IMG/VR virus record: IMGVR_UViG_3300020122_000238
Coordinates: 186,001-250,000 of that record
DNA length: 64,000 nucleotides
Direction: 5' to 3' (one strand)
Each line of letters starts with the position of its first letter. Positions within the stretch are counted from its first letter, which is position 1. A program made the translations under genes and the position numbers. The notes beneath the pieces are model-generated. The model was not told where the DNA came from and made no database searches. It worked only from the letters and a program-made list of their open reading frames with translations. Positions 3,872-63,557 of this stretch are shown here, piece by piece.

Positions 3872-3877
3872 TACACC
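3872..3877 (-). promoter_or_regulatory. class II motif GGTGTA
   Basis: 10 nt upstream of ATG 3861. Confidence 0.6.
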
Positions 3878-3944
3878 GTTTTTAGGGTCCCAACCCCAAA
3901 AACGTCCCACGGCCTTGGAAATTCTGGTAATTTTGGCCGCTTTC

Positions 3945-3950
3945 GGTGTA
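3945..3950 (+). promoter_or_regulatory. class II motif GGTGTA
   Basis: 11 nt upstream of ATG 3962. Confidence 0.6.
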
Positions 3951-3961
3951 GGGATCTGCCC

Positions 3962-6289
3962 ATGGTCGACTTCCAAATCTTCTCTCTGCAAGACGAAACC
4001 AACCAGGACCCGCGTTGGATCCTCCAGAAGCATGGCCGCCCCCTTCCTCCGGCCGGCACCAAGGTCCTGAAGTGCAAGGTCCAGATCCCGGTCACGAATG
4101 GCGTCGCCCCTCCGGAAGATGGGGATGAACTCACGGCGTACTGGGTCGAGCAAGAGGAGACCACGACAAGCGCTCTCTCCTTGAACGTCTATGCGTGGGG
4201 AGACTACGTGTTCGTCGGGGATCACCACTATACCGATATCAGCTACCAGATCGGTGGTGTCGAAGATGTCGATCCGTTCGTCGAGATGCAGGTCATCGGA
4301 GTGCCGGAGCATCGGCAAGTCCAAGTCACCGAGCAGTACGAAGCAACTTTCGGCTACAACTCGTACGGAAGCCGTTGGTCGTCAAGGACCGTCTCGCAAC
4401 TGGACACCTACAACGATCGCTACGACTACGAGCTGAAGCGCTACGTGCCCGGCGCCCCGTGGAACTTCTGCAAGATGAAGGTCACGGCGGGATCTGTAAC
4501 ACAGGAGATCAACCTCAAGATCCACCGCCCCGTGGGCGGCACCCTCACGTTGGACAATGGGGGGTTGCATACCAGGCTGGAGTTCAAGGCTTCCCTGAAC
4601 TTCTTCGGGCTGCCGCTGACGTGGACCGAGTCGCTGGTGCTCAACTCCGAGCGGTATGGGGGCGGTCGCGATCAGCAGTGGTCGAAGATGACCGAGCTTC
4701 TGCGTGGATACAAGATCACGGAGGGCGCGGATGCGCTCTGGGCTCGATTCCTCGACGACAATGCGAAGAACGGGGAAGATGTCGCGAAGATCAAGGGCAT
4801 CGAGGGGCGGAAGGGAGTCAAGGAAGTCCTCGCTCGGCTGCGTGCCGAGGAGCCGCTTCTCGCCAGGTTCTATGACTGGCTCCACGAGAGCAAGACCTCT
4901 GGAGGGACCAGCAACAACACCTTGCTGGCGGCCTTCCTGACGAAGCACGGGAAGAACTACGATGAGGTCGTCGCCGGCCTTCGTACGGCCATGGCAGCGG
5001 CCCCGGGGAAGGTGACCATCACCAAAAACTGGCGCGGTCGTCGGGGTGGTGCCCATTCCTACTCGTACGAGCAGCCGATGGGGCGGAGGGAAATCTGCCT
5101 CTCGCTCCCTGGTGCTTCCGAGAAGAACGAGGAGCAGCGCTCGAAGAAGGAATGGAACATGCGCAAGGGCGCACGGAACCAGGCCATCGGCTTGGGCGTG
5201 TCCCCCGAAGGGCATCCGACCCTCCTTGCGGCCATCGAGGGTCAGGAAATCCCGCTCAGCCTCTTCCACAAGCACGGAGACGCTCTGGCTCCCGTGAACA
5301 CCGAGTTCGACCTCTGGGAGATGGCCCTCGTTCAGCCGGGCTGGAGGCCGATCCTCTCCGAGATCGCCCACGATGCGAGCCGGCGGAACAAGTACGAGAA
5401 GGACATCACGCCCTACCTCGCCTTCCTGTTCCGGCTGCCCAACTACCTCGATCGGAACACGGAGCCGGGCGCGGGCTGGAAGACGATGCCCAAGTTCGTG
5501 AAGTCGGAGTACGAGCTGGAGATGAAGGACGAAGAGGCGTCAGAAGCGGGGACCACCAAGCGTCGTTCCGCCATGACCCCCGACGTCAACAACGCCAAGA
5601 GGACCGTCGTGGTTCCCTACGTCGCCATGGCGATCTCGGGCATTCAGACGACCTACTGCTACTCGCTCGACTACCAGGTCTTCGAGACGATGGACATCGA
5701 CCGTCAGTCGAGCACCCCGATCGTCCGTGAGCTGGAGAAGAAGCTCAACGGACGCGACGACTACGGGATGATGTACTTCACGCTGACGGGAACGGCGAGG
5801 AACACGGGTTACCCCGCCTTCCTGATCATCTTCGAACGACGGAAGACCCTCTCGAAAACGCACGTACACTTTCATCGGGTTCACCCGTGCCGTTCGAAGG
5901 ACGGTCGGGCCACGCCGGCATCCAAGCTTATCGAGGAGGGGTACAGGTACATGGCGGGCAACATCCGGGCGGAAGAGATCTTCGCACAGCAGGGCGACCT
6001 CATCTTCATCAAGACGGACCAGAAGATCGAGATCACCGATGCTGTGAAGCCGGTGAAGGAGTTCGAGTCCCATTGCTTCGTCCCGAAACAAGACAAGCCC
6101 GTCCTCCTGGCTCCGAACACGACGAAGATCAAGAACCGGCTGGGTCACCTCATCTGCGAGGGCATCTTCATGGTGAAGCACCCCGAGCACGAGAACATCA
6201 AGGCGATGCCGCCCGGGACGTACGAGGTCCGGCGCTGCAAGAGCTACGAGAACAACCCCACGGGCGTCTGGGTCCTCAACATCGACTGA
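3962..6289 (+). CDS. 775-aa hypothetical protein with a C-terminal QGD...HxEH...PPGxY beta domain
   Basis: strong GC3 bias; QQGDLIFIK...HPEHENI..MPPGTYEVRR resembles a small domain I recall from phage/bacterial hypothetical proteins. Confidence 0.85.
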   Translation: MVDFQIFSLQDETNQDPRWILQKHGRPLPPAGTKVLKCKVQIPVTNGVAPPEDGDELTAYWVEQEETTTSALSLNVYAWGDYVFVGDHHYTDISYQIGGVEDVDPFVEMQVIGVPEHRQVQVTEQYEATFGYNSYGSRWSSRTVSQLDTYNDRYDYELKRYVPGAPWNFCKMKVTAGSVTQEINLKIHRPVGGTLTLDNGGLHTRLEFKASLNFFGLPLTWTESLVLNSERYGGGRDQQWSKMTELLRGYKITEGADALWARFLDDNAKNGEDVAKIKGIEGRKGVKEVLARLRAEEPLLARFYDWLHESKTSGGTSNNTLLAAFLTKHGKNYDEVVAGLRTAMAAAPGKVTITKNWRGRRGGAHSYSYEQPMGRREICLSLPGASEKNEEQRSKKEWNMRKGARNQAIGLGVSPEGHPTLLAAIEGQEIPLSLFHKHGDALAPVNTEFDLWEMALVQPGWRPILSEIAHDASRRNKYEKDITPYLAFLFRLPNYLDRNTEPGAGWKTMPKFVKSEYELEMKDEEASEAGTTKRRSAMTPDVNNAKRTVVVPYVAMAISGIQTTYCYSLDYQVFETMDIDRQSSTPIVRELEKKLNGRDDYGMMYFTLTGTARNTGYPAFLIIFERRKTLSKTHVHFHRVHPCRSKDGRATPASKLIEEGYRYMAGNIRAEEIFAQQGDLIFIKTDQKIEITDAVKPVKEFESHCFVPKQDKPVLLAPNTTKIKNRLGHLICEGIFMVKHPEHENIKAMPPGTYEVRRCKSYENNPTGVWVLNID

Positions 6290-6294
6290 CGACC

Positions 6295-7035: not shown

Positions 7036-7082
7036 CCATGAAGTTGGGGATGTGTAACCCCTAATTCGGTGTAAGAAGGGTC

Positions 7083-7280
7083 ATGCCCAAAAAAGCCGAG
7101 AAGTTCTTCGTCACGACCCTCCAGGTTCAGGGGTCGGGCGAGTACCCCTGGGATATGCTCCGGTACGACATGTGCGGACCGAAGACGGAGGGGGAGAACC
7201 TCCGGGCGCACAAGGGACTCGCCGTCGTGGTCGTGGATTACGGGGTCGTCAAGATCTTCCCGGCGGGGATGACCAAGTGA
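7083..7280 (+). CDS. hypothetical protein
   Basis: 65 aa; GGTGTA at 7068-7073. Confidence 0.55.
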   Translation: MPKKAEKFFVTTLQVQGSGEYPWDMLRYDMCGPKTEGENLRAHKGLAVVVVDYGVVKIFPAGMTK

Positions 7281-8912: not shown

Positions 8913-8943
8913 TTTTGGGGGTCTTCCGGTGTACTAGTTGCTC

Positions 8944-10074
8944 ATGGCAAGAGCACGCACCTCCAAGACCCCTGCAACTCCCACTCCCACGGAACCCGCC
9001 ACGGCTGCTCGCGAGCTTATTGTAAGCTTCGATACAACGGGATCGATGTTCCCCTGTCTCACCCAGGTGAGACGGAACGTTGGAGCCCTGATCGAGCGCA
9101 TGTTCCGCGAGGTCCCCGGCATCCGTATTGGGCTCATCGCCCACGGCGACTACTGCGACGGGCCCCGGATGATCAGCAAGCACGAGCTGTCCACCGACAT
9201 GCGCTCGCTCAGTCGCTTCGTCGAGACGACGGATTCGACGGGCGGCGGAGATGCGCCTGAGTGCTACGAAGCAGTTCTCCACGAAGCGAGGGGCTTCAAC
9301 TGGACGTCCGGCGAATCCAAGGCCCTTGTGATGATCGGGGATGAAGTTCCCCACGGCCCGGAAGAGCGGCAGAACCGGCACCACTACGACTGGCGCAACG
9401 AGGCCAACAGTCTTCGAGACATGGGCGTCAAAATCTACGGCGTCCAGTGCCTCAACCGCCGACACGCGACCAGCTTCTACTCGACGATCGCTCGCGTCAG
9501 CGGGGGCTACCACCTTCAGCTCGACCAGTTCGCGAACATCACAGAGCTGCTCCTCGCCGTCTCGTATCAGCAGGCGGGGGAGACCCAGCTCCAGAACTAC
9601 GAAGCCGAAGTCCAGGGCTCCGGCCGGATGACTCGGAACCTCGACGCGATCTTCGCTCGGCTGCGAGGGCGGACGGTGGCGGCCACCATGGGCACGACCG
9701 ATCTCCGGGCTGTCCCCTCGGGCCGGTTCCAGGTCCTCACGGTCGACCGCGAGATGGCCATCAAGGCGTTCTGCGAGGGGCAAGGCGTCACTTTCGGCAA
9801 GGGCAGGGGCTTCTACGAGCTGTCCAAGCCCGAGACGGTTCAGGGCACCAAGGAAATCGTTCTCATGGATCGTCGGACTGGGGACCTCTTCACGGGGCCG
9901 AAGGCTCGGGAGATGCTCTCGCTCCCGCTGCACGATGAAGACGTTCGCCTGCGTCCGGCTCACCTCGAAGAGTACGCCGTCTTCATTCAATCTACCTCTG
10001 TAAATAGAAAACTGGTGACTGGGACGCGCCTTCTGTACGAGATCCCGGACTGGGATGCCGCGGTGGCAGCCTGA
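8944..10074 (+). CDS. vWA domain protein
   Basis: MIDAS-like SFDTTGSM, GGGDAPECYE and LVMIGDE; GGTGTA 8928-8933 lies 10 nt before ATG 8944. Confidence 0.85.
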   Translation: MARARTSKTPATPTPTEPATAARELIVSFDTTGSMFPCLTQVRRNVGALIERMFREVPGIRIGLIAHGDYCDGPRMISKHELSTDMRSLSRFVETTDSTGGGDAPECYEAVLHEARGFNWTSGESKALVMIGDEVPHGPEERQNRHHYDWRNEANSLRDMGVKIYGVQCLNRRHATSFYSTIARVSGGYHLQLDQFANITELLLAVSYQQAGETQLQNYEAEVQGSGRMTRNLDAIFARLRGRTVAATMGTTDLRAVPSGRFQVLTVDREMAIKAFCEGQGVTFGKGRGFYELSKPETVQGTKEIVLMDRRTGDLFTGPKAREMLSLPLHDEDVRLRPAHLEEYAVFIQSTSVNRKLVTGTRLLYEIPDWDAAVAA

Positions 10075-10940: not shown

Positions 10941-11303
10941 ATGCCCAAAGAACGTGTCTGGTCTACTCCGCTTCTGAACATCGTGCGGATGCCTCAGGAA
11001 GGGCGAGATCGTCTCCTCCGAGAGGAGATGAAGCTTCGGGCTCTCCTTCGAGCAGAGCAAAAAGAGGAGCTGACACTTCTCGATCTCCTCAAGAAGAAGC
11101 TCGGTAGGCAGAACTACACCTTCGTCAAGGGCCCCGATTGCCGCCTTTGGGTGTGGGAGAATCCGGCTGAGGGTTGGCGGGTCTACGCCAACAACCAACA
11201 TGGCCTGTCCTTCGAGATCCTCGTTCCTGGAAAAGACCCCACCGAAGAAAAAGCGTGGGCTGCCTGGAACGCATATCGGAAGGCTCTCGGCCATCCGGTG
11301 TAG
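10941..11303 (+). CDS. hypothetical protein
   Basis: 120 aa; ends GTG TAG inside a GGTGTA motif. Confidence 0.65.
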   Translation: MPKERVWSTPLLNIVRMPQEGRDRLLREEMKLRALLRAEQKEELTLLDLLKKKLGRQNYTFVKGPDCRLWVWENPAEGWRVYANNQHGLSFEILVPGKDPTEEKAWAAWNAYRKALGHPV

Positions 11304-11312: not shown

Positions 11313-11810
11313 ATGGGCGTTGACTACTCAGCAAATCTGATCTTGGGTGTGGCCGTTTCTCGCGAGGAGCTATTCCCGAGAGACCCCGAATCGACGGTTC
11401 TCTGTAAAAAGGGCCACGTCCGGGAGAACTCCTTCGAGTTCTGCCCCCAAGACGGCACTCCTTTCAAGGAAAAGTACCTCCACAGGCCAACCCCTGCGGT
11501 CCTCGCGTATGCCGAATCGCTGAAGATGTCCCCTGAAGACCTCTTCAGCATCGGAAACTGGGAAAAGAACGTCGGAATCTACGACGGCCAACCCTTCCCC
11601 AGCAGCATGAGCGACAAGGAGATGACCCCCGTGCTCGGGATCGAACTCCTGACAACGGGCAGCCATCGTGGGGGCTCTACTCAAGATGCCATTTCGATGT
11701 CTATCTTGGAAGCGGCGGAAAAGGTGAACCTCATCCGGACCATCGCCCTCAAGATCGGGATCCCCGAGGATCGCCCCATCGAGCTGTACCTCACGCTGAG
11801 CGCGGGCTGA
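11313..11810 (+). CDS. hypothetical protein
   Basis: 165 aa; GGTGTA (11297-11302) 10 nt upstream. Confidence 0.7.
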   Translation: MGVDYSANLILGVAVSREELFPRDPESTVLCKKGHVRENSFEFCPQDGTPFKEKYLHRPTPAVLAYAESLKMSPEDLFSIGNWEKNVGIYDGQPFPSSMSDKEMTPVLGIELLTTGSHRGGSTQDAISMSILEAAEKVNLIRTIALKIGIPEDRPIELYLTLSAG

Positions 11811-11831
11811 TTTGGTGTACTAGCCGAGGGC

Positions 11832-14832: not shown

Positions 14833-14882
14833 CGGGAACCATCTAGTTTCGGTGTAGTACCTACCCAAGGAAAACCAGAAAA

Positions 14883-17775: not shown

Positions 17776-17794
17776 TCCTGGTGTAACCCCCAGG

Positions 17795-19704: not shown

Positions 19705-19741
19705 GGGCATTTTGGTGTAAGATCCCCCAGGAGGATCTTCC

Positions 19742-21355: not shown

Positions 21356-21439
21356 GGATTCCGAGGGTTTAGCAACAATCGTCCGCCAGCCTGTTGATTT
21401 GTGTGAAAAGCACACCATGGTTGGTGTAGAAGAAACACC

Positions 21440-28423: not shown

Positions 28424-29337
28424 TGGACCCCATCAAGATCATCCTCCCGCCCACCAGGCCCAAGCACGCGACGAACGCGTGGGAAGCCCTCATGGCGGAT
28501 GATGATGGTATCCTTGAGGGTGATACCGCGACCTTCACCTTCGACACGAAGGTTGCGGAAGGGGACCTCTGCGACATCTACCGAGGCACCTACAACGGCC
28601 GCCCGGCGGCTTTGAAGGTGTCCCATGGGGTCGACGTCAACGACCTCGTCGAGCATGAGGCGGACGTCATCCGGCACCTCTTCCCCGCAGAAGAGGCGAA
28701 CGTCGGGTTCCTCCGCTACCTCTCCAAGCTCAGCTACTCCTTCCATGACGAACGGGAGGGAAAGCGGATCAACGTCTTCCCCTGGCTCGGAGAACATGTC
28801 TCCGTCGCCGACATCCTGAAGGCGTATCCAGGCGGCATCGAGTACCAAAACATGGTCTGGATGTTCAAGCGTGGACTGGAAGGCCTCGGATACGTTCACG
28901 AAAAGAACGTCATTCACGGTGCGGTCCTCCCCCCGCATCTGCTGATCCATCCGGCCGACCACGGGGCCAAGCTGATCGACTGGTCCTACGCCGTCCTCAA
29001 CGCGGACGCACGACGGAACAAGGTCCGGGCCATGTCCGCACCCTGGAGGTCCTTCTATGCCCCCGAGATTCCCGGGAAAGGGATCCCGACGGCGGCGACG
29101 GATATCTACATGCTGGCCAAGTGCATGGTCGCTCTGCAAGGCGGGGACGTCACCACGGACGCGATGCCGGATACGACCCCAGAGCCCATTCAGAGGTTCT
29201 TGAGGGAGTGCCTGTCTCCCATGCAGCACCTTCGGCCGAACAGCGCATGGGATCTCGTCGAGGAGTTCAACGCGCTTCTTCGCTCCGTGATCGGCCCGCC
29301 GAAATACTTCAAGTTCGAGATGTCCCCCAAGGTGTAA
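28423..29337 (+). CDS. Ser/Thr kinase-fold protein lacking the catalytic HRD Asp (pseudokinase-like)
   Basis: AALKV and EHE kept; HGAVLPPH replaces HRDLKPEN; DWS replaces DFG; coupled to the PurA-like gene. Confidence 0.75.
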   Translation: MDPIKIILPPTRPKHATNAWEALMADDDGILEGDTATFTFDTKVAEGDLCDIYRGTYNGRPAALKVSHGVDVNDLVEHEADVIRHLFPAEEANVGFLRYLSKLSYSFHDEREGKRINVFPWLGEHVSVADILKAYPGGIEYQNMVWMFKRGLEGLGYVHEKNVIHGAVLPPHLLIHPADHGAKLIDWSYAVLNADARRNKVRAMSAPWRSFYAPEIPGKGIPTAATDIYMLAKCMVALQGGDVTTDAMPDTTPEPIQRFLRECLSPMQHLRPNSAWDLVEEFNALLRSVIGPPKYFKFEMSPKV

Positions 29338-32466: not shown

Positions 32467-32605
32467 AAAGGGTAGGGCTGGCCTTTCTACACCAGATAAA
32501 GTCTAAATCAAGAGAAATCGACGTAATTATGAGCCTTTTGGGGATCCACACCCCCAAAAGGCTCATAATTTCTAGAACGCCTACACTTCTGGTGTAGACG
32601 CCCTT

Positions 32606-33121: not shown

Positions 33122-33213
33122 GTATGTCCAGAGAGTAGACTTTCACGTTTTCCGTCTAGTACGTGATCCAACATACTAGACGATACCCGTCGAAGTCGGT
33201 GTAACCTCTCCCC

Positions 33214-37527: not shown

Positions 37528-37743
37528 ATGTCGACCCCTCAGCACCCTTCCCTGGAAGAACGCCTCAGTCTCTCTTGGGCCTCGTGGCTGCACTCGCATG
37601 AGGACGCAACACAGAAGTGCCCGGTGGTCCACTGCGAGCATAACCGCCCGCTTGGGACTATGCCGGGCTCCTCGTGTTGTTGCTCGTGGTGTCAAGGCCC
37701 GCCTTGGCCGATAAAAGAGCCGAATCCTAGTCCGAAGGTGTAA
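37528..37743 (+). CDS. Cys/His-rich small protein
   Basis: CPVVHCEH...CCCSWC; ends GTG TAA inside GGTGTA. Confidence 0.5.
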   Translation: MSTPQHPSLEERLSLSWASWLHSHEDATQKCPVVHCEHNRPLGTMPGSSCCCSWCQGPPWPIKEPNPSPKV

Positions 37744-41435: not shown

Positions 41436-41498
41436 CCCCGTCCCTACACCGACATTTTTATCGTTGCAGGATTACCCAAAGAATCGTAGGAAATAGGT

Positions 41499-42740: not shown

Positions 42741-42777
42741 GCTCAGGACAGCCATGGGGCGGTGTAGTCCCGCCTCC

Positions 42778-44503: not shown

Positions 44504-44563
44504 GTTTTTGGGGTACACCGAAGCCAGGGTCTTACTTCCCTGGTTTCGATGTACGGGGGATCC

Positions 44564-45143: not shown

Positions 45144-45164
45144 CTGGTGTAAGTAAAAAAAGAT

Positions 45165-46302: not shown

Positions 46303-46345
46303 AATCTCTGAATGTCCGGGATAATTTCTGGTGTACTACGAGAAT

Positions 46346-48406: not shown

Positions 48407-48421
48407 ACAAGAGATTACACC

Positions 48422-51679: not shown

Positions 51680-52786
51680 CTACACCAGCTTGAGATCAAC
51701 CGAAGCGCGTTCAAGAGAGTCGAACGATGCCCTCAAATCCCCGACACCACCACGGTAGGCGAGAGCGTAAGGGGTAGGGTTGTCCCCAGCGGCATCCGTC
51801 AGTTTTTTGGAAACGGCGTGCCCGATCAGACCTTCCAAGATGATCATGGCACCCACACCCCCATTTCGGATCTTATGCGCGAGGTTGGATGATATCTTGT
51901 GCCCGCCGTTGTCGGTGGGATACCATTCGGCCTCGATGTTGAAGCGCTCCCGAATCGTCCGGAGCTTCTCGTCTTTGACGATGCCCCCGATGATGACGAG
52001 CGGCTTGTTTTGAAGCCGGGCCCTGAGCGTGGGCCATTCCCCAGGGGTGACTGTCTTCGCGAGGATCACATCTTCTTCCCCCTCGAAGGCGGCGAGCTTC
52101 TCCCTGGATTCGCGGGCGATCCTATCCCAGTCGTCGTTATGATCCTTCGCGAGTCCTCGTACGTAGTTGTGGGGGCAGTTGTCCCCACGGACCTTGGAGA
52201 GCAGGGGGATCGAGCGTTCGACCTGCCAGAACAGGTGATGGGTTGAGGGCAGCCGCGTCAACATCTGGCGCACCTCAGCCGTGAGAGCCTGCACGTAGGT
52301 TTGGATCTGAGCAGGGGGTTTCTTCCGAAGATCTGACGTGGCGAAATCCTCGATCTCATCGAGGATCCTCTGTGCACTATGTGCGAGAGGATCTTCCTCG
52401 ACTGCCGGGTCTTCGTGCGGGGGTGCCTGGGGTGGGAGGACCACCTTGACAGGAGGCACCTCTACCACCTTGACAGGGACAGGCGAGGCTTTCAGCTCTT
52501 GCGGGGGAGCTTGAAACGGAACCGCACCGATCAACTCCAGAAGGCTTGTCAACGCATCGCATAGTTTGAGACGCTCTGCATCGATGATTGAAGGCGCTGG
52601 AGTGGACGCTTCCTGTTTGATGGCCGCGAGCATGGCGGCGATCGTTCGTTGTTCCGCATCCTCTCTGTGCGCGACCTCGAAGGAGGTGAGTCGTTCGCGG
52701 AGACATGCGACCATGTCAGATATCGGCCGCACCTCGGCTTCGACGCTGAGAGCACAGGCATTGTATAGTAAATTGGGCAGTTCCAT
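51680..52786 (-). CDS. helical protein with C-terminal DUF2325-like domain
   Basis: LVIIGG...AMIILEGLIGHAVSKKL; start uncertain; ends GTG TAG inside GGTGTA. Confidence 0.6.
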   Translation of the reverse strand: MELPNLLYNACALSVEAEVRPISDMVACLRERLTSFEVAHREDAEQRTIAAMLAAIKQEASTPAPSIIDAERLKLCDALTSLLELIGAVPFQAPPQELKASPVPVKVVEVPPVKVVLPPQAPPHEDPAVEEDPLAHSAQRILDEIEDFATSDLRKKPPAQIQTYVQALTAEVRQMLTRLPSTHHLFWQVERSIPLLSKVRGDNCPHNYVRGLAKDHNDDWDRIARESREKLAAFEGEEDVILAKTVTPGEWPTLRARLQNKPLVIIGGIVKDEKLRTIRERFNIEAEWYPTDNGGHKISSNLAHKIRNGGVGAMIILEGLIGHAVSKKLTDAAGDNPTPYALAYRGGVGDLRASFDSLERASVDLKLV

Positions 52787-52893: not shown

Positions 52894-52935
52894 GCACGTC
52901 GACCTAGAATACAAATTGCCGGTGTATAGGCCAAC

Positions 52936-53325
52936 ATGTCCGACGACGACTTGGAAGAATACTGGGAGGTCAGTGTCCTCCCTCCCCGCCCTCCTGGTCT
53001 TCTCCAACCTTTGGGCCCTCCGGAAGGATCTGGAGGGCCTCTCTATATTTTTGGAAAGGCCTCTGTGCTCTATTTGGAGGTAGGGGCCGCAAATTGCGAG
53101 CGCTTTGGAGACCGGCAACCCATTACGATGACCCCCGTATCTGACACAGGGGGCACGCAATGGCGACTCAGCCCGGAATTCCGATTTACACGATCAGCAC
53201 TCATCTCAAGGTTCGATCTTTGGGATAATCCAAGCGGCGGGCGCAAGCTATACACCTCTGACTTCGAGCCTCTCAACGTTGGCCCTGAGTATACATTCAC
53301 CTTCCACCTGAATATTAAAATTTGA
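52936..53325 (+). CDS. tail-fibre-associated-like beta protein with N-terminal acidic-YW-Pro tag
   Basis: MSDDDLEEYWEVSVLPPRPP; LWDNPSGGRKLY is similar to ORF 59224. Confidence 0.65.
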   Translation: MSDDDLEEYWEVSVLPPRPPGLLQPLGPPEGSGGPLYIFGKASVLYLEVGAANCERFGDRQPITMTPVSDTGGTQWRLSPEFRFTRSALISRFDLWDNPSGGRKLYTSDFEPLNVGPEYTFTFHLNIKI

Positions 53326-54799: not shown

Positions 54800-55105
54800 A
54801 TGGCTCGTTTCTGTACACACTTTTCCGATATCGACTGCTGTGATGTCCCTTGTTCAAGGCAAGGCTGTGGACACGAATGCTCGTACCACGAAGAGAAGTT
54901 GTGCATTGGCGTGGGTTGTACCTGCACAGCCTTCGACAACACCCCCGTTGTCCGAGATCACCATGCTGAGGACCTCAGCTTCATCCTGGAGCTGAGGACT
55001 GCGACCCCCGAGAAGCTCCGCGAGCTTGAGATCAACCTGCACTTTGGGGGTCCACAGTGGCAGCGCATCGCAGTTGAACGAGAAGTCTCAAAAAGATCGG
55101 TGTAG
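54800..55105 (+). CDS. Cys/His-rich protein
   Basis: CTH..DCCDVPC..GCGHEC.YH..C..VGCTC. Confidence 0.6.
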   Translation: MARFCTHFSDIDCCDVPCSRQGCGHECSYHEEKLCIGVGCTCTAFDNTPVVRDHHAEDLSFILELRTATPEKLRELEINLHFGGPQWQRIAVEREVSKRSV

Positions 55106-55687: not shown

Positions 55688-56277
55688 TCGTCCGCGAGAA
55701 GGTGCCCCCACGCGTTGTCAGGTCTACCTTTGGGCCCTCTCGTCCGAAGCAACCTGACAATGGGGAGATCGGCTGCCGCAGCCAGGGAATCATCCAGCTC
55801 CCTGGTTGCGATGGAGCACTGGTCGATGTGGTGCGCGGGATTTGAGATGTCCCGCACCGTGATGAGCCACACCCCCTTCTTCTTCTGAATGTAGACCCCA
55901 GCCCGCCAGGTGTTCATGACCTTCGTGTTGGGGTCTTGGGCTCCCGTGGCGACATCGAATGGCTCTGGGATCAAAGCCATCGTGTTCTCCGTCTCACGGT
56001 AGAGATGTTTCCCGAAGGGCCGTCGCGTGTACTCCGTGCTGATCTGGTTCAGCGGAATTTGAGTCTCATGGCAGACAGTATCCCACCGCGTAAGAATTCC
56101 CCCAGGCACGAGAGTGGTGATTGGCCCTGTAGTTCTTGACCCGTGGGGGGTCGTCAGGTCAGGCCGCCAGGTCACGATCCCATCAACCTCGGAGGTCTTC
56201 AGCGATCGAATCACAACATGACCGGGGCACATGTCCCCCAAAATCATGACAGGCTTCTGCATCAGGACAAGGATCAT
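55684..56277 (-). CDS. hypothetical protein with C-terminal tag
   Basis: ends DNAWGHLLADD; GGTGTA 10 nt upstream. Confidence 0.65.
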   Translation of the reverse strand: MILVLMQKPVMILGDMCPGHVVIRSLKTSEVDGIVTWRPDLTTPHGSRTTGPITTLVPGGILTRWDTVCHETQIPLNQISTEYTRRPFGKHLYRETENTMALIPEPFDVATGAQDPNTKVMNTWRAGVYIQKKKGVWLITVRDISNPAHHIDQCSIATRELDDSLAAAADLPIVRLLRTRGPKGRPDNAWGHLLADD

Positions 56278-56287: not shown

Positions 56288-56301
56288 TACACCGCGGTGT
56301 A
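56288..56301. promoter_or_regulatory. palindromic back-to-back pair of class II motifs
   Basis: TACACCGCGGTGTA; ATGs at 56277 (-) and 56312 (+), each 10 nt away. Confidence 0.75.
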
Positions 56302-56311: not shown

Positions 56312-57031
56312 ATGGGATCGACCCCCAAAAAGACCCCTGTGAAGTACCACTCCTGGTGGACCGAGAAAGCCGTACCTCATCGGAACATGTTGATGGTGAG
56401 GTACGACTACGGGCACTCCAGGGTCGATAGATCCTTGTACGGATGTCTGGTCGTCGGAGACGACCAGACGCTCCTCTGGCTCAGCAGTGAGGAGATCCGG
56501 GAAAAGTGGAAGCCCTTCCGCGTACCCTTCTCGGCAGTTATTCCTCTGGGGGTGTGGCCCCAGTGGGTGACTCGACGAGATGTCCAATGGCACACAGCGC
56601 CAGACCATCCTCGGCGAATGACCATCGTCTCGTACAAGCCCAAGAGCTTCTGGCTTGCAACCACCACCGTGGTCGAGCCCTTCGAGGGCCCAAGATTCCA
56701 AGTCTACAGAGCAACGCAGAGTTTCAAGGTTGATCACGAGATGGTGCAATACGGGGACCATCTCACCCTCGATAGAGACTACAACGTGTGGACCGTGCGT
56801 AAGAAGAGCATCGCTCGGTTCTGCAACCGGGAGATCACAGCCTTCCTTGCTATGCAATACCTCATCCCCGTGATTCAACCGAGCGGGATGCCCTTCGATT
56901 GGAGCATTCAGAAGTTCACCACACGCTTCTGGAGTCTCCACACTTTCGCTCAGAACCATCGGCCTCTGATGCCCTCAAAACCGACCGCTTGGGACGTTGT
57001 GATGGCCGACGAATTCGAGGAAATGGTGTAG
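56312..57031 (+). CDS. hypothetical protein with C-terminal tag
   Basis: ends PTAWDVVMADEFEEMV. Confidence 0.7.
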   Translation: MGSTPKKTPVKYHSWWTEKAVPHRNMLMVRYDYGHSRVDRSLYGCLVVGDDQTLLWLSSEEIREKWKPFRVPFSAVIPLGVWPQWVTRRDVQWHTAPDHPRRMTIVSYKPKSFWLATTTVVEPFEGPRFQVYRATQSFKVDHEMVQYGDHLTLDRDYNVWTVRKKSIARFCNREITAFLAMQYLIPVIQPSGMPFDWSIQKFTTRFWSLHTFAQNHRPLMPSKPTAWDVVMADEFEEMV

Positions 57032-57040: not shown

Positions 57041-57586
57041 ATGGGAATCCTCGATCGTGTTGTGCGTCGCGTCTGTGAAAAAGTCTCCAAGTGGGCCCCT
57101 TCGTGGCGCATGATCACCCGAGGTGACAACGAGCCCTACCTGAAGAGGTACTACTTCTTCAGGCGTGAATGGGTTCTGGAATGGTTCGAGACTCAGGGTT
57201 GGGAGACCCCGAGGTTCGTGGCCAAGATCCCCTCGCTCTACCTTCACCATTTCGTGGCGGGGGATGATGAGGTCGAGCTGCACAACCATCCCTTCAAGAA
57301 GAGCCTCGCCCTCGTTCTGACGGGCGGGTATCACGAGGAACGTAAGGTGGGGAACGAGGTCCACAGCCGGATCGTCCCGCCCTGGTCCTTCAACCTCATC
57401 GACGCCAATACCTTCCACAAGGTGGAACTCCTCGACAAGGAGAAGGGCGCCTGGACCATCTTCCTTTCGGGAGAGCGTACCCAGCGCTGGGGTTTTTGGC
57501 ATCCGGAGACGTTCGAGTACGTCGACTGGGAAAACCATGTGGACGCCCGCCCCAACCCCGAGGCAAGGCTTCACCATGCCCCCTAG
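57041..57586 (+). CDS. cupin-like protein
   Basis: LYLHHF...D..LHNHPF..SLALVL.GGY.E...FHKV...WTIF. Confidence 0.65.
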   Translation: MGILDRVVRRVCEKVSKWAPSWRMITRGDNEPYLKRYYFFRREWVLEWFETQGWETPRFVAKIPSLYLHHFVAGDDEVELHNHPFKKSLALVLTGGYHEERKVGNEVHSRIVPPWSFNLIDANTFHKVELLDKEKGAWTIFLSGERTQRWGFWHPETFEYVDWENHVDARPNPEARLHHAP

Positions 57587-57908
57587 AATGTGGGCTGGGG
57601 GGCCCCTCTACCCTGACTGGTTGGTCATCAACCAACTCGTTGAGACGACGGCAAGACACCCAGGGATACGACAACAATCAGTCATTACCAGGATCACTGA
57701 CGGGTTGGTGTACGTCCGATCAAATACCGGCATCGGAGATATTTGGTATCGAGCAGAGCACTTCGTGGACGAATGGCGGGTGCTTCATACCCCCCTGAAG
57801 AACGATCTCGCTCCCGAGGACTACAGGTGGGAGCCCAAGCCTGTCGAGCCCCCCAAGCCCGCTCCGACGTGGCATGAGCTCCTCATTGACGATGACTTCG
57901 ACATCTAG
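57576..57908 (+). CDS. hypothetical protein with C-terminal tag
   Basis: ends PTWHELLIDDDFDI. Confidence 0.7.
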   Translation: MPPRMWAGGPLYPDWLVINQLVETTARHPGIRQQSVITRITDGLVYVRSNTGIGDIWYRAEHFVDEWRVLHTPLKNDLAPEDYRWEPKPVEPPKPAPTWHELLIDDDFDI

Positions 57909-57933
57909 TCGAAGTCATCGTCAATGAGGAGCT
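57877..57933. repeat. perfect 26-bp inverted repeat formed by the 3' ends of two convergent genes
   Basis: AGCTCCTCATTGACGATGACTTCGAC-ATCTA-GTCGAAGTCATCGTCAATGAGGAGCT. Confidence 0.95.
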
Positions 57934-58621
57934 GCTCCCAGGCAGTGGGCCAGAAGATGTGGACCCTGGGGGTGGCCGGAGGGGGAGGGGGCTGCGTCGG
58001 CACCCCGGGAAGGTACCTCCCCATCAGAGAGGGGGTCTCGGTCGGATCGAACTCCGGGACTTCAACTCGACGTCGCATGTTTTCCAAAGCCCGCGTGTTG
58101 AAGACCATGTCCCCAACGTGTTCGTGAGCCGTTAACCCCTCGCCGGAAATCCGATCCATGGCGTCGAAGACCCGCTGGTCCTCTTCCTCTCGAAGACGCT
58201 CTTGCGCGAACATCTCTCGTGTCCTCACAACATCCTGCCACACAGTATTAGGGGCAACCTGCACGAAGGAGGGCGTAAACTCCTCTCGGAAAACCGAGTA
58301 CCTGGGGTCAGGAGAGGGTTCTCCAATCCCGTAGACGTTGCGGAACGTTTCTTGGGAGACGCACAGATCCACGTGGACCATACGCTCCATGATCTCCATT
58401 TCCTCCGATAGGTTGAGGGATGAGGGCAGCAAAGGAAGCAACTGTATGGGGGGTGCCGGTAGGATGGGGAGCGCCGGTAGGACCGGTAGGATGGGGAGCG
58501 CCGGTAGGACCGGTAGGAGCCCCATCCTCCTGATCACTTCATTCGCACGCTCACGTATGTCTTGGAGCACCAGATGCTCCAGAACTCGCCGGATGAGAGG
58601 GACACCATCACGAGGGGGCAT
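57905..58621 (-). CDS. hypothetical Pro-rich protein with C-terminal tag
   Basis: ends PTAWEQLLIDDDFD; GGTGTA (58631-58636) 9 nt upstream. Confidence 0.65.
   Translation of the reverse strand: MPPRDGVPLIRRVLEHLVLQDIRERANEVIRRMGLLPVLPALPILPVLPALPILPAPPIQLLPLLPSSLNLSEEMEIMERMVHVDLCVSQETFRNVYGIGEPSPDPRYSVFREEFTPSFVQVAPNTVWQDVVRTREMFAQERLREEEDQRVFDAMDRISGEGLTAHEHVGDMVFNTRALENMRRRVEVPEFDPTETPSLMGRYLPGVPTQPPPPPATPRVHIFWPTAWEQLLIDDDFD
58456..58518. repeat. 27-bp tandem repeat (about 2.3 copies) encoding LPx repeats
   Basis: unit CCGGTAGGATGGGGAGCGCCGGTAGGA. Confidence 0.85.
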
Positions 58622-58662
58622 GGAGAGCCCTACACCACCTTTCCGCGGTGTAGGGCAGGAAG

Positions 58663-59136
58663 ATGGCTGACGAAGATCCGGATGATTTGAGCGCGGACTG
58701 GAAACTGATCGGAGGACCTCCGCCTCCTCCCGAAGAACCCCCTCCGATCAGTGCAACCGAAGCCATCGAGCGCATGGTGATGGCTTCGGTTCAGTACTTG
58801 GCCATCCTATCGGCAAGGGTGGAAAAGTCCCCATCCATCACCATACAGGTGCATCACAAGAAGGACGCAGAGGGGCAAATCGTCACGACCTGGTCTGCCC
58901 AATACCGCTCCGAGTCGAACCCAGCCATCAGCCTGGTCCCCAGTACGCAGTTCCCCACCATCGACGAAGCCGTTGAGAGCTTGCATAGCAACATGGCTAC
59001 CATGCTCTCGAATCAGTTGAGAGCATGGCAAAAAGAGGCGGCCTCGCACCAACAGCAGATGGAGGAGAAGTTCAAGATCGCTTCCTCCATCGCTACGATC
59101 TTGGGGAATTTAGGGGTTCCGCAGACGAAAGTCTAG
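58663..59136 (+). CDS. hypothetical protein with N-terminal acidic-W-polyPro tag
   Basis: MADEDPDDLSADWKLIGGPPPPPEEP; GGTGTA 10 nt upstream. Confidence 0.7.
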   Translation: MADEDPDDLSADWKLIGGPPPPPEEPPPISATEAIERMVMASVQYLAILSARVEKSPSITIQVHHKKDAEGQIVTTWSAQYRSESNPAISLVPSTQFPTIDEAVESLHSNMATMLSNQLRAWQKEAASHQQQMEEKFKIASSIATILGNLGVPQTKV

Positions 59137-59223
59137 CCTTACAGGCTACGTCTGTGTTACCCTCGCCTCGAAACCCTGCCAGATCAGCGCGATCTAGGGC
59201 AAAGCCGGTGTATAGGAGTACTC

Positions 59224-59649
59224 ATGAGCGAAGACCTGTATGATTTGGACAGCTATTGGGAGTTGAGGGTTCTACCTCCTCGGCCTCCCGAACCTGAGAT
59301 CGAAGCAGCGCCAGAACCCATTCAAGAACTCACTTTCACTCCGAGGGGAGTGTACTTGGGCCTATTCACAGCCCTACCCCAAGACACCAATGAGGGTGTG
59401 GAGCTTACCGATACCAGATACGCTCGCGCATCTGTGAATCCCAGATTCACATCAAACAGTAGGGGGGAATCGGTAGCTGAGATCACACACCGATTCCCCC
59501 CTATGAGCACTCCCGTGGTTGTGATGGGTGGGGGTCTTTGGGATGCCCCTGTGGGGGGCAATCTCCTCTACTTTTCAAGCCTAGCCGTGAATCTCCGCGT
59601 CGACCTCGGAATGAACGCGGAGATTCACCTCACCGTCTCTGCTGACTAG
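59224..59649 (+). CDS. tail-fibre-associated-like protein with N-terminal acidic-YW-Pro tag
   Basis: VYLGLFTALP...YARA...LWDAPVGGNLLY resembles a small family often annotated as phage tail fibre protein. Confidence 0.65.
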   Translation: MSEDLYDLDSYWELRVLPPRPPEPEIEAAPEPIQELTFTPRGVYLGLFTALPQDTNEGVELTDTRYARASVNPRFTSNSRGESVAEITHRFPPMSTPVVVMGGGLWDAPVGGNLLYFSSLAVNLRVDLGMNAEIHLTVSAD

Positions 59650-61862: not shown

Positions 61863-62083
61863 TTGCGGTGGAAGACCTTGATCTCCCCCTCGGTCTCTTC
61901 GACGGAAGCCAGCATTTGCAGGGCTTCTTGGGCGGTTCGGACCTTCTCCCGAGTGCTGTAGGTGAAGGCCCAAGATCGTACGTCAACCCATCCGTCGGTA
62001 TCCCCCGCCCACCAATACCTCCGAGCCCAGCGATTGGCGGCAGAGGTATCAACACGCACATCTCGACGGATGATGTAGAGCAT
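61859..62083 (-). CDS. hypothetical protein
   Basis: 74 aa directly downstream of the DUF4419-like gene. Confidence 0.55.
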   Translation of the reverse strand: MLYIIRRDVRVDTSAANRWARRYWWAGDTDGWVDVRSWAFTYSTREKVRTAQEALQMLASVEETEGEIKVFHRK

Positions 62084-62086
62084 GGA

Positions 62087-63178
62087 CTACTTCGCAGCCG
62101 GCTCGTCGCGCACAGCCCAGCCGATGGCCGGACGCACGATGAGGCTCTCCTCGTTCTGTGATACGCCAACGAAGCCCCCGAGGAACTCCATCTCGAACTT
62201 CGCGTCGTAGTAGAGCCAGGTGAACGGGACCTTCGAGAGACCGAGCGAGAAATCGGAGGGGTTGGGCCCTCCGCACATGTCCCCGATGCCCCGGGACCAC
62301 TTGTCGAGCGCGCGGTTCTTCCCGCGCGTGAGGTACGGGAAGAGCACGTTGATCCAACCCGTCACGTACGGCCCGCCGCTACCCCCGCCCTCATGGTAGA
62401 AGCTCTCCCAGAACTTGGGGTCGGCCTTACCTTCGGCCGACTCGATGACCTTGTCCAACACGGGGAGCAGCGCGTCAATCCACCACCCAAGGTCGTACTC
62501 CGCGAGGACCGCTGCCCGCGCCTTGACCCGACGCCAGTCTTCCACGGTGCCGAGCAGGGTGATCTCCGGGATGCCGCATGCCGTCCGCATGCCGTATGTG
62601 AAGTAGGCGCTCATGGCGTCCATGAGGACAATCTCGGAGGCCGCCTTCTCGATCAGGCCGGTCGTCGAGAAGTCCGCAACGATGAGGTCACGGGTCTTGC
62701 CGATGTGCTGGGCGAGCTGGTCAGAGAACTCACCGAAGGCTCCCGGCCAATCATTATCGGCGGAGCCCTTCACGAAGAAGTCCCGCACGACCTCGATGTG
62801 CTCCTTCCCCTCGTGCTTGACGAAGCGGCTCCGGAGCTTCTCCGCATTCTCATTGACATGGGCCGCGAAGCCCTGCGCGATGCAGAGCCAGAAGTCGTCC
62901 GGGCTCAGGGCGAACGGGTAGTGGTGATCGAAGGCGATGTGGACAGCCGAGATGAAGGGGTTGATGCTGACGGTGTCCCCTTTTCTCTCCGACTTGCGGG
63001 TTCCGATGAGGGTCTCCGAGCTGGAGGCCGCTGCTTCGGGGGGAGCACCCCCAACGAGCCGGTGAATGGCTTCACCAACGGCAATACCGGCATCATAGGG
63101 CCGGTATTTGTTTTTGATCTGGGTGTACGGAGCTTCCGCGAGGGCGATCTTTTTGATCGTGGCTTTGAAGGTCTGCAT
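62087..63178 (-). CDS. DUF4419-like protein
   Basis: LSPDDFWL.IAQGF..HVNENAEKLR..FV.HEGK, FSTT, CGIP.ITL.GT.EDW, YVTGWI. Confidence 0.75.
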   Translation of the reverse strand: MQTFKATIKKIALAEAPYTQIKNKYRPYDAGIAVGEAIHRLVGGAPPEAAASSSETLIGTRKSERKGDTVSINPFISAVHIAFDHHYPFALSPDDFWLCIAQGFAAHVNENAEKLRSRFVKHEGKEHIEVVRDFFVKGSADNDWPGAFGEFSDQLAQHIGKTRDLIVADFSTTGLIEKAASEIVLMDAMSAYFTYGMRTACGIPEITLLGTVEDWRRVKARAAVLAEYDLGWWIDALLPVLDKVIESAEGKADPKFWESFYHEGGGSGGPYVTGWINVLFPYLTRGKNRALDKWSRGIGDMCGGPNPSDFSLGLSKVPFTWLYYDAKFEMEFLGGFVGVSQNEESLIVRPAIGWAVRDEPAAK

Positions 63179-63204
63179 GAGGACCTCTTACACCAAGACG
63201 ACCC

Positions 63205-63534
63205 TCAAGAGAGGAAGAAAAAGTCCACCCTTTTGCCCTCGAACTCCCAAACCTCGACGATCTTCTCATCCTGAGACCCCAAGCTCCGCCACCTCGCCTG
63301 GACGATGTCCTTGTCGTAGAGCTTCTTCAGCCCAGCGCCTCGAAGGATCTGTTCCACCCAGAGCTTGTCCTGATCAGCGGACGACGCCGGGTAGACGATC
63401 AGATCCATGTCTTTGGTGCTCGACCCCTTGATCAAAACACTCCCCGTCAAGCCGAGATAGTACCTCGGCTTGAGAAGCTCGGAAAGCGTGAGAATGAAGG
63501 TCAGGCCGGAATCTCGATCCCAGGTGATAGGCAT
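63205..63534 (-). CDS. minimal Pol-beta-like nucleotidyltransferase
   Basis: LTGSVLIKGSSTKDMDLIV (GS..G...DxD) and a third acidic in RVDFF; GGTGTA 10 nt upstream. Confidence 0.65.
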   Translation of the reverse strand: MPITWDRDSGLTFILTLSELLKPRYYLGLTGSVLIKGSSTKDMDLIVYPASSADQDKLWVEQILRGAGLKKLYDKDIVQARWRSLGSQDEKIVEVWEFEGKRVDFFFLS

Positions 63535-63557
63535 CCCCAGGGGCTACACCAACCAGG

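What the first reader, a model, noticed from the sequence alone, without database searches (positions are those of the whole stretch)
3872..63550. Class II single-box motif GGTGTA about 10 nt before start codons (more than 30 copies): a second regulon
Seen upstream of ATG/GTG at about 9-12 nt, e.g. 3872, 3945, 7068, 8928, 11297, 11814, 17780, 21423, 32591, 33198, 41445, 42761, 44514, 46330, 48416, 52921, 55099, 56288, 56296, 57025, 58631, 58647, 59207, 63189, 63545. It shares TGTA with class I but I saw no conserved -35 box. Many tagged and N-tagged genes belong to this class, while class I genes carry almost no tags. Established analogue: single-box T4 late promoters. Inference: a middle or late regulon, which would fit the tagged proteins being virion-bound. 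It could instead be a translation-initiation signal.
Basis: partly seen in the sequence, partly recalled or inferred. Interest (0 to 1): 0.66.

Follow-up and report, generated by a model that had tools for sequence, protein, structure and literature searches.

The report
Single-box GGTGTA promoter for leaderless genes
A strictly conserved seven-base signal (C/T-GGTGTA) sits exactly ten bases before the ATG of about a fifth of the genes of this uncultivated huge phage and its relatives; it is most likely a promoter without a -35 box that starts transcription at the start codon itself (leaderless mRNA), a new variant of a known way of expressing genes.

Summary
GGTGTA occurs 57 times in the window (10.7 expected). 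All 25 listed sites are present, each with an ATG or GTG 9-12 nt downstream. Genome-wide (a 275 kb virus fragment), 44 of 170 copies have an ATG at spacer exactly 10, the best fixed-spacing score of all 4096 hexamers. The full signal is Y-GGTGTA-N10-ATG, with no -35 box and no Shine-Dalgarno in the spacer.

It is under selection. It is unchanged at 32 of 32 alignable sites in an 89%-identical relative, and it is enriched in relatives with about 68-78% portal identity.

With the ATG's A as +1, the motif's TA falls at -12/-11. One relative extends it to a TAnnnT hexamer followed by 6 nt and ATG. The phage's two-box "class I" promoter also abuts the ATG at the canonical -35 distance. Copies further from a start carry a Shine-Dalgarno.

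Best reading (about 0.65): a -35-independent promoter producing leaderless mRNAs.

The "late, virion" inference is not supported. The genes served are ligase, helicase, methylase, ClpX-like, nucleotide and NAD enzymes, and many small accessory genes.

No RNA data exist, the host is unknown, and the reading factor is unidentified. A translation signal remains a minority rival.

The parts
446..451 (-). YGGTGTA box, spacer 10 to the ATG of ORF 67-435 (122 aa)
3872..3877 (-). box, spacer 10, ORF 3634-3861 (75 aa); first gene of a divergent pair
3945..3950 (+). box, spacer 11, ORF 3962-6289 (775 aa); divergent partner of 3872
7068..7073 (+). box, spacer 9, ORF 7083-7280 (65 aa)
8928..8933 (+). box, spacer 10, ORF 8944-10074 (376 aa, weak vWA)
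11297..11302 (+). box, spacer 10, ORF 11313-11810 (165 aa); the TA of the box is part of the upstream gene's TAG stop
11814..11819 (+). box, spacer 12, ORF 11832-13505 (557 aa, PF00912 transglycosylase)
17780..17785 (+). box, spacer 9, ORF 17795-17980 (61 aa)
21423..21428 (+). box, spacer 11, ORF 21440-22156 (238 aa, Nudix + NrtR winged helix)
29331..29336 (+). box (A, not Y, before it), spacer 12, ORF 29349-29501 (50 aa)
32591..32596 (+). box, spacer 9 to a GTG, ORF 32606-33121 (171 aa)
33198..33203 (+). box, spacer 10, ORF 33214-34029 (271 aa, N-terminal tag)
37737..37742 (+). box (A before it), spacer 10, ORF 37753-38211 (152 aa, C-terminal tag)
41445..41450 (-). box, spacer 9, ORF 41046-41435 (129 aa)
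42761..42766 (+). box, spacer 11, ORF 42778-43215 (145 aa)
44514..44519 (-). box, spacer 10, ORF 43943-44503 (186 aa, lipoprotein-like N-terminus)
46330..46335 (+). box, spacer 10, ORF 46346-46669 (107 aa)
48416..48421 (-). box, spacer 9, ORF 48011-48406 (131 aa, low coding score)
52921..52926 (+). box, spacer 9, ORF 52936-53325 (129 aa, N-terminal acidic/W tag)
55099..55104 (+). box, spacer 10, ORF 55115-55687 (190 aa)
56288..56301 (.). two back-to-back boxes (TACACC-GC-GGTGTA). With their two 10-nt spacers they fill the whole 34-nt gap between the divergent ATGs of ORF 55684-56277(-) and ORF 56312-57031(+)
57025..57030 (+). box, spacer 10, ORF 57041-57586 (181 aa)
58631..58652 (.). divergent pair of boxes: 58631-58636(-), spacer 9, ORF 57905-58621; and 58647-58652(+), spacer 10, ORF 58663-59136. 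The intergenic gap is 41 nt
59207..59212 (+). box, spacer 11, ORF 59224-59649 (141 aa, N-terminal tag)
63189..63194 (-). box, spacer 10, ORF 62087-63178 (363 aa, DUF4419)
63545..63550 (-). box, spacer 10, ORF 63205-63534 (109 aa)
14851..14856 (+). probable leadered copy: box 26 nt before the ATG of the 864-aa vWFA-like gene (14883-17477), with an AAGGA Shine-Dalgarno in between; a class I box pair lies just upstream (14806 onward)
19714..19719 (+). probable leadered copy: box 22 nt before the ATG of ORF 19742-20047, with AGGAGGA in between
45146..45151 (+). box with spacer 13 to the ATG of ORF 45165-45647 (160 aa, C-terminal tag)
51681..51686 (-). box with spacer 15 to the ATG of ORF 50499-51665 (388 aa)

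Best explanation
YGGTGTA is the single recognition element of a -35-independent promoter. If the A of the ATG is +1, the box occupies -17 to -11, and its T and A fall at -12 and -11, the two nucleating positions of sigma-70-family -10 elements. RNA polymerase would melt the DNA there and start at or within 1-2 nt of the ATG. The resulting mRNA has no leader and no Shine-Dalgarno and would be translated as a leaderless message. Shown: the motif, its spacing, its purifying selection, its conservation across a phage clade, the lack of a Shine-Dalgarno in the spacer, and the parallel geometry of the two-box class I promoters. Inferred: the transcription start, the polymerase, and the specificity factor. 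The polymerase is probably the host's, because no phage RNAP motif was found. The specificity factor is unknown; a conserved one fits best, because the box is invariant across phages whose own sigma-like protein and two-box promoters have both diverged. The genes served suggest an early or middle class (DNA metabolism and host takeover), not a late class.
For: 1) Spacing is sharply fixed: 44 sites at spacer 10 against about 2 expected, the top score of all 4096 hexamers.
2) Geometry: TA + 4 nt + 6 nt + ATG matches the TANNNT -10 motif that lies 6-7 bp before ORFs in Deinococcus-Thermus, where it was shown experimentally to be a promoter for leaderless genes (PMC12340547).
3) In relative G003 the box extends to cGGTGTATGkT. 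T at -7 occurs in 39 of 55 sites (p = 8e-16), giving a full TAnnnT hexamer followed by 6 nt and ATG.
4) The class I motif, GTTGATC-N16-TGTAGGAC-N4-ATG (34 copies at exactly N16), puts its -35-like box at -34 to -29 from the ATG's A. G003 has a differently spelt two-box class, CCGAAC-N16/17-GTAGTA-N5-ATG (30 of 40 at fixed spacing), with the same geometry. Unambiguous two-box promoters in this clade therefore also abut the ATG.
5) A Shine-Dalgarno is present in 4 of 54 copies at spacer 9-12 but in 11 of 28 copies at spacer 13-60 (p = 8e-4). The G003 ortholog of gene 148736 keeps the box but has a 23-nt leader containing AGGAGGA.
6) Genes that are first in a divergent pair, and so must own a promoter, are class I or II in 24 of 48 cases, against 62 of 278 co-directional genes (p = 1.5e-4). 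Two divergent pairs have gaps of only 34 and 41 nt that hold little beyond two boxes and their spacers.
7) Selection: GGTGTA is identical at 32 of 32 alignable sites between G000 and G001 (192 of 192 bases against about 87% in flanks and spacer, P about 2e-12). The spacer sequence itself is unconstrained.
8) The exact pattern is enriched in G001 (51 copies), G002 (24), G003 (55), G005 (5), G006 (7) and G007 (8), against 0-3 for the reversed control. It is kept at orthologous ligase and helicase genes and at orthologs of two genes of unknown function (140647 and the ClpX-like 163376) despite 43-54% protein identity.
9) Start codons are ATG in 57 of 62 class II genes.
10) No phage IF1, IF3 or S21 was found that could reprogram ribosomes. 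No NADFDGD-type RNAP motif was found.
Against: No transcript 5' ends are available, because no sequencing run holds this sequence. T at -7 is not conserved in G000 itself (11 of 44). The TG of the box sits at -14/-13, one base off the canonical extended -10 position. Intragenic copies are only mildly depleted: sense 17 against 25.3 expected, antisense 35 against 43.2, so about 50 would-be internal promoters are tolerated. Terminator-like hairpins are not enriched just upstream: 7 of 69 sites against 8.5% of random positions. Many class II genes lie within 10-30 nt of a co-directional upstream gene, a layout that a translational signal would also give. C at -1 is not specific to this class: SD-led genes have 45% C. 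No specificity factor is identified, and the host is unknown.
Confidence: 0.65

Rival explanations
1. GGUGUA is an RNA-level translation-initiation element, a non-Shine-Dalgarno ribosome-binding or enhancer site. It would be read on longer transcripts by the ribosome or by a phage or host RNA-binding factor.
For: It lies where ribosome-binding sites lie. It has fixed spacing to the start codon. It occurs before many genes inside tight co-directional arrays, with a median gap of 26 nt. It replaces the Shine-Dalgarno, which is present in only 4 of 54 copies. Intragenic depletion is slightly stronger on the sense strand.
Against: Only GGUG can pair with the canonical 16S tail (CACC), and the following UA cannot. 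GGUG sits 12 nt from the AUG, several nt beyond the spacing expected for that part of the anti-SD (established SD geometry; the host rRNA was not seen). The near-total intolerance of mismatches is unlike Shine-Dalgarno sites. Copies at 13-60 nt carry their own Shine-Dalgarno. First genes of divergent pairs with 34-41 nt gaps would need further promoters inside the neighbouring gene, and no other conserved upstream element exists. G003 extends the box into a TAnnnT hexamer. No phage IF1, IF3 or S21 was found.
Confidence: 0.13
2. The box is the binding or cleavage site of a regulator acting on promoters or mRNAs that are defined by something else. Examples are a phage repressor or activator operator, or an endoribonuclease processing site that creates short-leader mRNAs.
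For: A few copies form palindromes: TACACC-N2-GGTGTA at 56288/56296 and 18141/18149, and GGTGTACACC at genome position 156153. The element is strictly conserved, as protein-binding sites are.
Against: Most sites are single and asymmetric, whereas dimeric regulators need dyads. No other promoter-like element accompanies them. A cut at the box would leave a 10-nt leader with no Shine-Dalgarno. Strict orientation and spacing to the ATG fit a start-site-determining element.
Confidence: 0.08
3. It is a true T4-type late promoter, read by a gp55-like factor coupled to replication and driving virion genes.
For: It is a single box near -10 without a -35 box. Some copies precede genes inside the structural region, for example 96273 (1079 aa) and 83593.
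Against: The sequence is unrelated to TATAAATA. Most annotated targets are DNA-metabolism and auxiliary genes, not structural genes. The terminase and portal genes, like most of the structural block, lack the box. No gp55 or gp33 homolog was identified.
Confidence: 0.07

Closest known systems
The -10 motif (TANNNT) adjacent to ORFs in Deinococcus-Thermus, driving leaderless genes (PMC12340547); similar layouts in Actinobacteria (PMC4633059, PMC3160421)
   Same: A lone -10-type element 6-7 bp before the start codon, no Shine-Dalgarno, ATG preference, and TA at -12/-11. G003 shows the full TAnnnT hexamer.
   Different: Here the conserved part is the upstream extension plus TA (YGGTG-TA). In G000 the -7 T is not conserved. 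The element is almost invariant and phage-borne. The host and the sigma factor are unknown.
Thermus phage phiYS40 middle/late genes, mostly leaderless (as summarised in PMC3594737)
   Same: A large phage that expresses a temporal class of genes as leaderless mRNAs.
   Different: phiYS40 changes host IF2 and IF3 levels. No such factor, and no phage IF1, IF3 or S21, was seen here. The promoter sequences could not be compared because the primary paper is not held.
T4 late promoters (TATAAATA at about -10; gp55/gp33/gp45)
   Same: A single short box with no -35 box, defining a phage regulon.
   Different: The sequence differs. T4 late mRNAs have leaders with Shine-Dalgarno sites. T4 late targets are virion genes, whereas here they are mainly DNA-metabolism and accessory genes.
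Extended -10 (TGnTATAAT) promoters of sigma-70-family holoenzymes
   Same: Independence from a -35 box, bought by extra contacts just upstream of the -10 TA.
   Different: The TG here is at -14/-13 rather than -15/-14, and GG at -16/-15 is also invariant.
ECF-sigma two-box promoters (for example the AAC ... CGT type), relevant to the companion class I
   Same: Class I (GTTGATC-N16-TGTA) and G003 class I' (CCGAAC-N16/17-GTAGTA) have ECF-like spacing. They change together with a divergent phage sigma-like protein.
   Different: Class II lacks the -35 partner and does not change between the phages.

Membership tests
Leaderless-gene promoter (-10 element abutting the ORF) | -10-like element ending 6-7 bp before the start codon | tested here: met
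   GGTG-TAnnnn + 6 nt + ATG in 44 sites; the spacer distribution is 9:11, 10:44, 11:7, 12:7.
Leaderless-gene promoter (-10 element abutting the ORF) | TANNNT consensus (A at -11 and T at -7) | tested here: inconclusive
   TA is invariant. T at -7 occurs in 39 of 55 sites in G003 but only 11 of 44 in G000, 15 of 51 in G001 and 10 of 24 in G002.
Leaderless-gene promoter (-10 element abutting the ORF) | No Shine-Dalgarno; AUG strongly preferred | tested here: met
   A Shine-Dalgarno is present in 4 of 54 sites. ATG is the start in 57 of 62 genes. The ATG excess over SD-led genes is not significant (p = 0.2).
Leaderless-gene promoter (-10 element abutting the ORF) | Primary transcript 5' end at the start codon | not testable with these tools
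   No sequencing run holding the sequence was listed.
T4-type late promoter | Single box near -10, no -35 box | tested here: met
   There is no information content upstream of -17.
T4-type late promoter | TATAAATA-like sequence | tested here: not met
   The consensus is YGGTGTA.
T4-type late promoter | Drives late, virion genes | tested here: not met
   Targets are ligase, helicase, Dam methylase, ClpX-like, NT5C, Nudix and transglycosylase genes. The terminase and portal genes lack the box.
T4-type late promoter | gp55/gp33 homologs | not tested
   No dedicated profile was run. Only Sigma70 r2 and r4 families were searched.
Shine-Dalgarno ribosome-binding site | Complementarity to the 16S 3' tail at 5-9 nt from the AUG | tested here: not met
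   By sequence reasoning, only GGUG:CACC can pair, and it lies 12 nt from the AUG. The host rRNA itself was not available.
Shine-Dalgarno ribosome-binding site | Tolerance of partial matches | tested here: not met
   Of 18 single-mismatch variants, only GGTGTC and GGTGTG reach 9 sites, against 44 for the exact box.

The most novel reading that the evidence does not exclude
The invariant YGGTGTA box is read by a so far unrecognised, clade-conserved specificity factor. This could be functionally like T4 gp55 but unrelated in sequence, or a host-sigma appropriator. The result would be a portable 7-bp promoter that makes leaderless mRNAs in a whole lineage of huge phages, alongside a fast-evolving ECF-like sigma and promoter pair. 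Less likely, it is a new SD-independent translation element.
Probability: 0.25. Interest if true: 0.7.

Novelty: new variant of a known kind. Interest (0 to 1): 0.5.

Why it matters
It gives a precise, testable rule for where about 20% of the genes of an uncultivated huge-phage lineage start, which corrects start-codon calls. It implies that about 30% of the genes (class I plus class II) are expressed as leaderless mRNAs. It points to a two-tier transcription programme: an invariant single-box class and a lineage-specific two-box class that co-varies with a phage sigma-like protein. If confirmed, a 7-bp box plus ATG would be one of the most compact complete expression signals known. It would also hint that the unknown host translates leaderless mRNA efficiently.

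Tried and rejected
- RNA evidence: the look-up of sequencing runs listed no run.
- Host: two genome-contig scans with the ligase, as a single protein and as an alignment, gave nothing useful. The phage collection gave only distant (30%) vWFA homologs in Ackermannviridae-like phages.
- Phage RNAP or sigma in G000: no T7-like RNAP, RpoB domain or Sigma70_r2, and no NADFDGD motif in G000-G003. A 236-aa protein at genome 23072-23782 has a Sigma70_r4 domain, but it could be a small terminase subunit.
- Terminator immediately upstream of the box: not enriched.
- Avoidance of the box inside genes, against a synonymous-codon shuffle: only mild, z about -2 (sense) and -1.5 (antisense). This does not discriminate between a DNA-level and an RNA-level signal.
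- C at -1 as a start-site signature: also common before SD-led genes, so it was dropped as evidence.
- Phage IF3, IF1 and S21: none.
- Literature: no paper links GGTGTA to a phage promoter. The primary phiYS40 paper is not held.
- Rfam and tRNA scans of the window: nothing.

Full report
CONTEXT. The window is bases 186001-250000 of a single 275.3 kb IMG/VR virus record. The record is linear, CheckV estimates it at 58% complete, and its GC content is 58%. It encodes a large terminase, a portal, a baseplate wedge, a family-A-like DNA polymerase, helicases, ribonucleotide reductase and NAD-dependent ligase. It is therefore a fragment of a huge tailed phage. I built a rough codon-usage gene caller (about 330 genes). 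It misses some small genes, so the gene counts below are approximate.

OBSERVATION. GGTGTA occurs 57 times in the window, against 10.7 +/- 3.0 expected; none of 100 shuffles reached even 19. In all, 29 of the 57 copies are of this kind. Genome-wide there are 170 copies. ATG lies at spacer 10 in 44, at 9 in 11, at 11 in 7 and at 12 in 7, with about 2 per position elsewhere. GTG and TTG show almost no peak. GGTGTA ranks first of all 4096 hexamers for a fixed distance to ATG. Aligning the 44 sites shows one further constrained position, C or T just before the box (43 of 44). Nothing else is conserved from -50 to -18, and no purine-rich block appears in the spacer. Single-base variants are hardly used. 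The flanks are not conserved, so the signal is not a repeated DNA element.

A SECOND, TWO-BOX CLASS SETS THE FRAME. Of 108 GTTGATC copies, 34 have TGTA exactly 16 nt downstream, nearly all followed by ATG 8 nt later. Counting from the A of the ATG as +1, TTGATC occupies -34 to -29. That is the canonical place of a -35 hexamer. A motif pair that can hardly be anything but a promoter therefore already places the transcription start on the ATG. Relative G003 has a differently spelt class with the same geometry: CCGAAC-N16/17-GTAGTA-N5-ATG, with 30 of 40 copies at fixed spacing. Leaderless layout is thus a general habit of this phage group.

GEOMETRY OF CLASS II. With spacer 10 and +1 at the A of the ATG, the box spans -17 to -11, with T at -12 and A at -11. 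The notional hexamer TAnnnn ends 6 nt before the ATG. This is the arrangement of the TANNNT motif that lies about 6-7 bp before ORFs in Deinococcus radiodurans, where it was shown experimentally to act as the -10 region for leaderless genes (PMC12340547). In G003 the box is extended to cGGTGTATGkT, with T at -7 in 39 of 55 sites (p = 8e-16), which is a full TAnnnT hexamer. In G000 that T is not conserved (11 of 44).

SELECTION AND SPREAD. G001 is a more complete relative: 350 kb, 89% nucleotide identity over the aligned regions, and 92-99% identity for the proteins compared. It keeps GGTGTA unchanged at all 32 alignable sites, 192 of 192 bases against about 87% identity in flanks and spacer (P about 2e-12). 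The ATG is equally fixed, the spacer sequence is free, and three-base periodicity of substitutions begins at the ATG. The exact pattern GGTGTA-N10-ATG is enriched in relatives whose portal is 67-78% identical:
- G001: 51 copies
- G002: 24 copies
- G003: 55 copies
- G005: 5 copies
- G006: 7 copies
- G007: 8 copies
The reversed control pattern gives 0-3 in each. The pattern is not enriched in relatives with 46-52% portal identity and lower GC content (G004, G010). It is retained at orthologs with only 43-54% protein identity: the ligase and helicase genes and the orthologs of genes 140647 and 163376. The ligase alignment starts at the predicted Met in all three phages. Class I, by contrast, is confined to G000 and G001.

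PROMOTER OR TRANSLATION SIGNAL? Four results favour a promoter.
- Copies 13-60 nt from a start carry a Shine-Dalgarno in 11 of 28 cases. Copies at 9-12 nt carry one in 4 of 54 (p = 8e-4). Window examples are 14851 and 19714.
- The G003 ortholog of the ATPase gene 148736 keeps the box but has a 23-nt leader with AGGAGGA.
- Genes that are first in a divergent pair need their own promoter. They are class I or II in 24 of 48 cases, against 62 of 278 co-directional genes (p = 1.5e-4). In the window, the divergent pairs at 56277/56312 and 58621/58663 are separated by 34 and 41 nt. These gaps hold little more than two back-to-back boxes and their spacers.
- No other conserved element exists upstream that could be the promoter for these genes.

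Three points argue against a Shine-Dalgarno-type reading, from established anti-SD geometry. Only GGUG could pair with the canonical tail (CACC). It lies 12 nt from the AUG, which is too far. The invariant UA and the preceding pyrimidine would be unexplained. The phage's other genes use ordinary GGAGG-type sites, so the host ribosome appears conventional. No phage IF1, IF3 or S21 was found.

TESTS THAT DID NOT HELP. Terminator-like hairpins are not enriched upstream. Depletion of the box within coding sequence is mild on both strands: 17 against 25.3 on the sense strand and 35 against 43.2 on the antisense strand. C at -1 is common before SD-led genes too. The excess of ATG over SD-led genes is not significant. 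No RNA data could be found.

WHO READS IT? No phage RNA polymerase was detected, so the host enzyme is the likely polymerase. G002, G003 and G001 encode a roughly 300-aa protein with a Sigma70 region 2 match: 29.3 and 25.8 bits against a cut-off of 24 in G003 and G002, and an ortholog in G001 at E = 4e-20. The G000 fragment lacks it. It is only 26-34% identical between G001 and G002/G003. In each phage it is preceded by that phage's own two-box promoter. I infer that it reads class I and class I', and that it autoregulates. Class II is invariant across these phages. It is therefore more likely read by something conserved: the host's own sigma, or an unidentified conserved phage factor. This step is inference only.

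TIMING AND REGULON. About 70 genes in G000 carry the box. Those with annotation are:
- NAD-dependent ligase
- SF2 helicase
- an AAA/clamp-loader-like ATPase
- a metallophosphoesterase
- NT5C nucleotidase
- a ClpX-like ATPase
- a Dam-class methylase
- Nudix/NrtR
- a PBP-type transglycosylase
- Bax1-I
- DUF4419
The rest are many small ORFs in the accessory arm, where the window lies. The terminase and portal genes, like most of the structural block, lack the box. This is an early or middle profile, not a late one.

TAGS. By a regular expression they occur in 12 of 72 class II genes, 0 of 27 class I genes and 13 of 241 other genes (p = 0.03 and p = 0.002). Several untagged-class carriers lie just downstream of class II genes.

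VERDICT. The best explanation, at about 0.65, is a single-box promoter for leaderless mRNAs that is independent of a -35 box, conserved in a clade of uncultivated huge phages, and serves early or middle functions. It works like the Deinococcus-Thermus and phiYS40 leaderless promoters, and like T4 late promoters in being single-box. It is not a sequence member of either group. It is a new variant of a known kind, of moderate interest.

Noticed in passing
window 2408, 3196, 7030, 7874, 13764, 13828, 14068, 14806, 17480, 21152, 24858, 25839, 26464, 35871, 35891, 37249, 48707, 61461 (GTTGATC starts; either strand): Class I two-box promoter, GTTGATC-N16-TGTAGGAC-N4-ATG. There are 34 genome copies at exactly N16. 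All 24 class I genes in my gene set start with ATG. The class is confined to G000 and G001. Its -35 box contains GATC, and the phage encodes a Dam-class methylase (genome 183148-184080) that is itself behind a class II box, so methylation control of class I is conceivable.
   Followed up: partly
for example window 20256-20444, 34026-34535, 34596-35159, 37753-38211, 45165-45647, 49668-50033, 54237-54797, 55684-56277, 56312-57031, 57708-57908, 57905-58621 (C-terminal tags); 33214, 38215, 52936, 58663, 59224 (N-terminal tags): About 20-25 small proteins share a terminal peptide: a C-terminal ...P-T-A-W-E-x-L-L-x-D-D-D(F/I), or an N-terminal acidic run followed by Y-W-E-x-L. It looks like a short linear motif for a common partner. 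The acidic-hydrophobic tip recalls SSB-type tails. The phage also encodes a ClpX-like ATPase (genome 163376-164623).
   Followed up: partly
window 27107-28423: An adenylosuccinate-synthetase homolog whose best PHROG is the PurZ-type family (phrog_1211, E = 7.5e-78; Pfam Adenylsucc_synt). Whether the phage makes 2-aminoadenine DNA was not examined. If it does, the 'A' of the box would be modified.
   Followed up: no
window 21440-23552: An NAD-salvage pair: a Nudix protein with an NrtR winged-helix domain (behind a class II box) followed by nicotinamide phosphoribosyltransferase.
   Followed up: no
window 14806-14883: Tandem signals before the 864-aa vWFA/CobT-like gene: a class I box pair whose ATG position reads ATC, then a GGTGTA box, then a 26-nt leader with AAGGA.
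   Followed up: partly
window 18141-18154; genome 156153-156162: Palindromic box pairs (TACACC-CC-GGTGTA and GGTGTACACC) in which only one side, or neither side, faces a clear gene.
   Followed up: no
L083:166-1071 (-), L088:793-1701 (-), L089:1408-2340 (+): Relatives encode a divergent sigma-70-family protein of about 300 aa, with region 2 split by an insertion. It is preceded by the phage's own two-box promoter and, in G002 and G003, also by a canonical TTGAC-N17/18-TAnnAC promoter. It is absent from the G000 fragment.
   Followed up: partly
L050:11600-12600 (G003, about 351.6-352.6 kb): A repeat-spacer array in relative G003, with period about 72 nt and a roughly 36-nt repeat beginning CTCAAAGGTGGCCC. 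It is CRISPR-like.
   Followed up: partly
genome 23072-23782 (L002:3072-3782): A 236-aa protein with a clear Sigma70 region 4 domain (E = 2.5e-13) but no region 2. It lies between a fused NusG/KOW-like plus 5'-3' exonuclease gene and the structural block. It could be a transcription factor or a small terminase subunit.
   Followed up: partly
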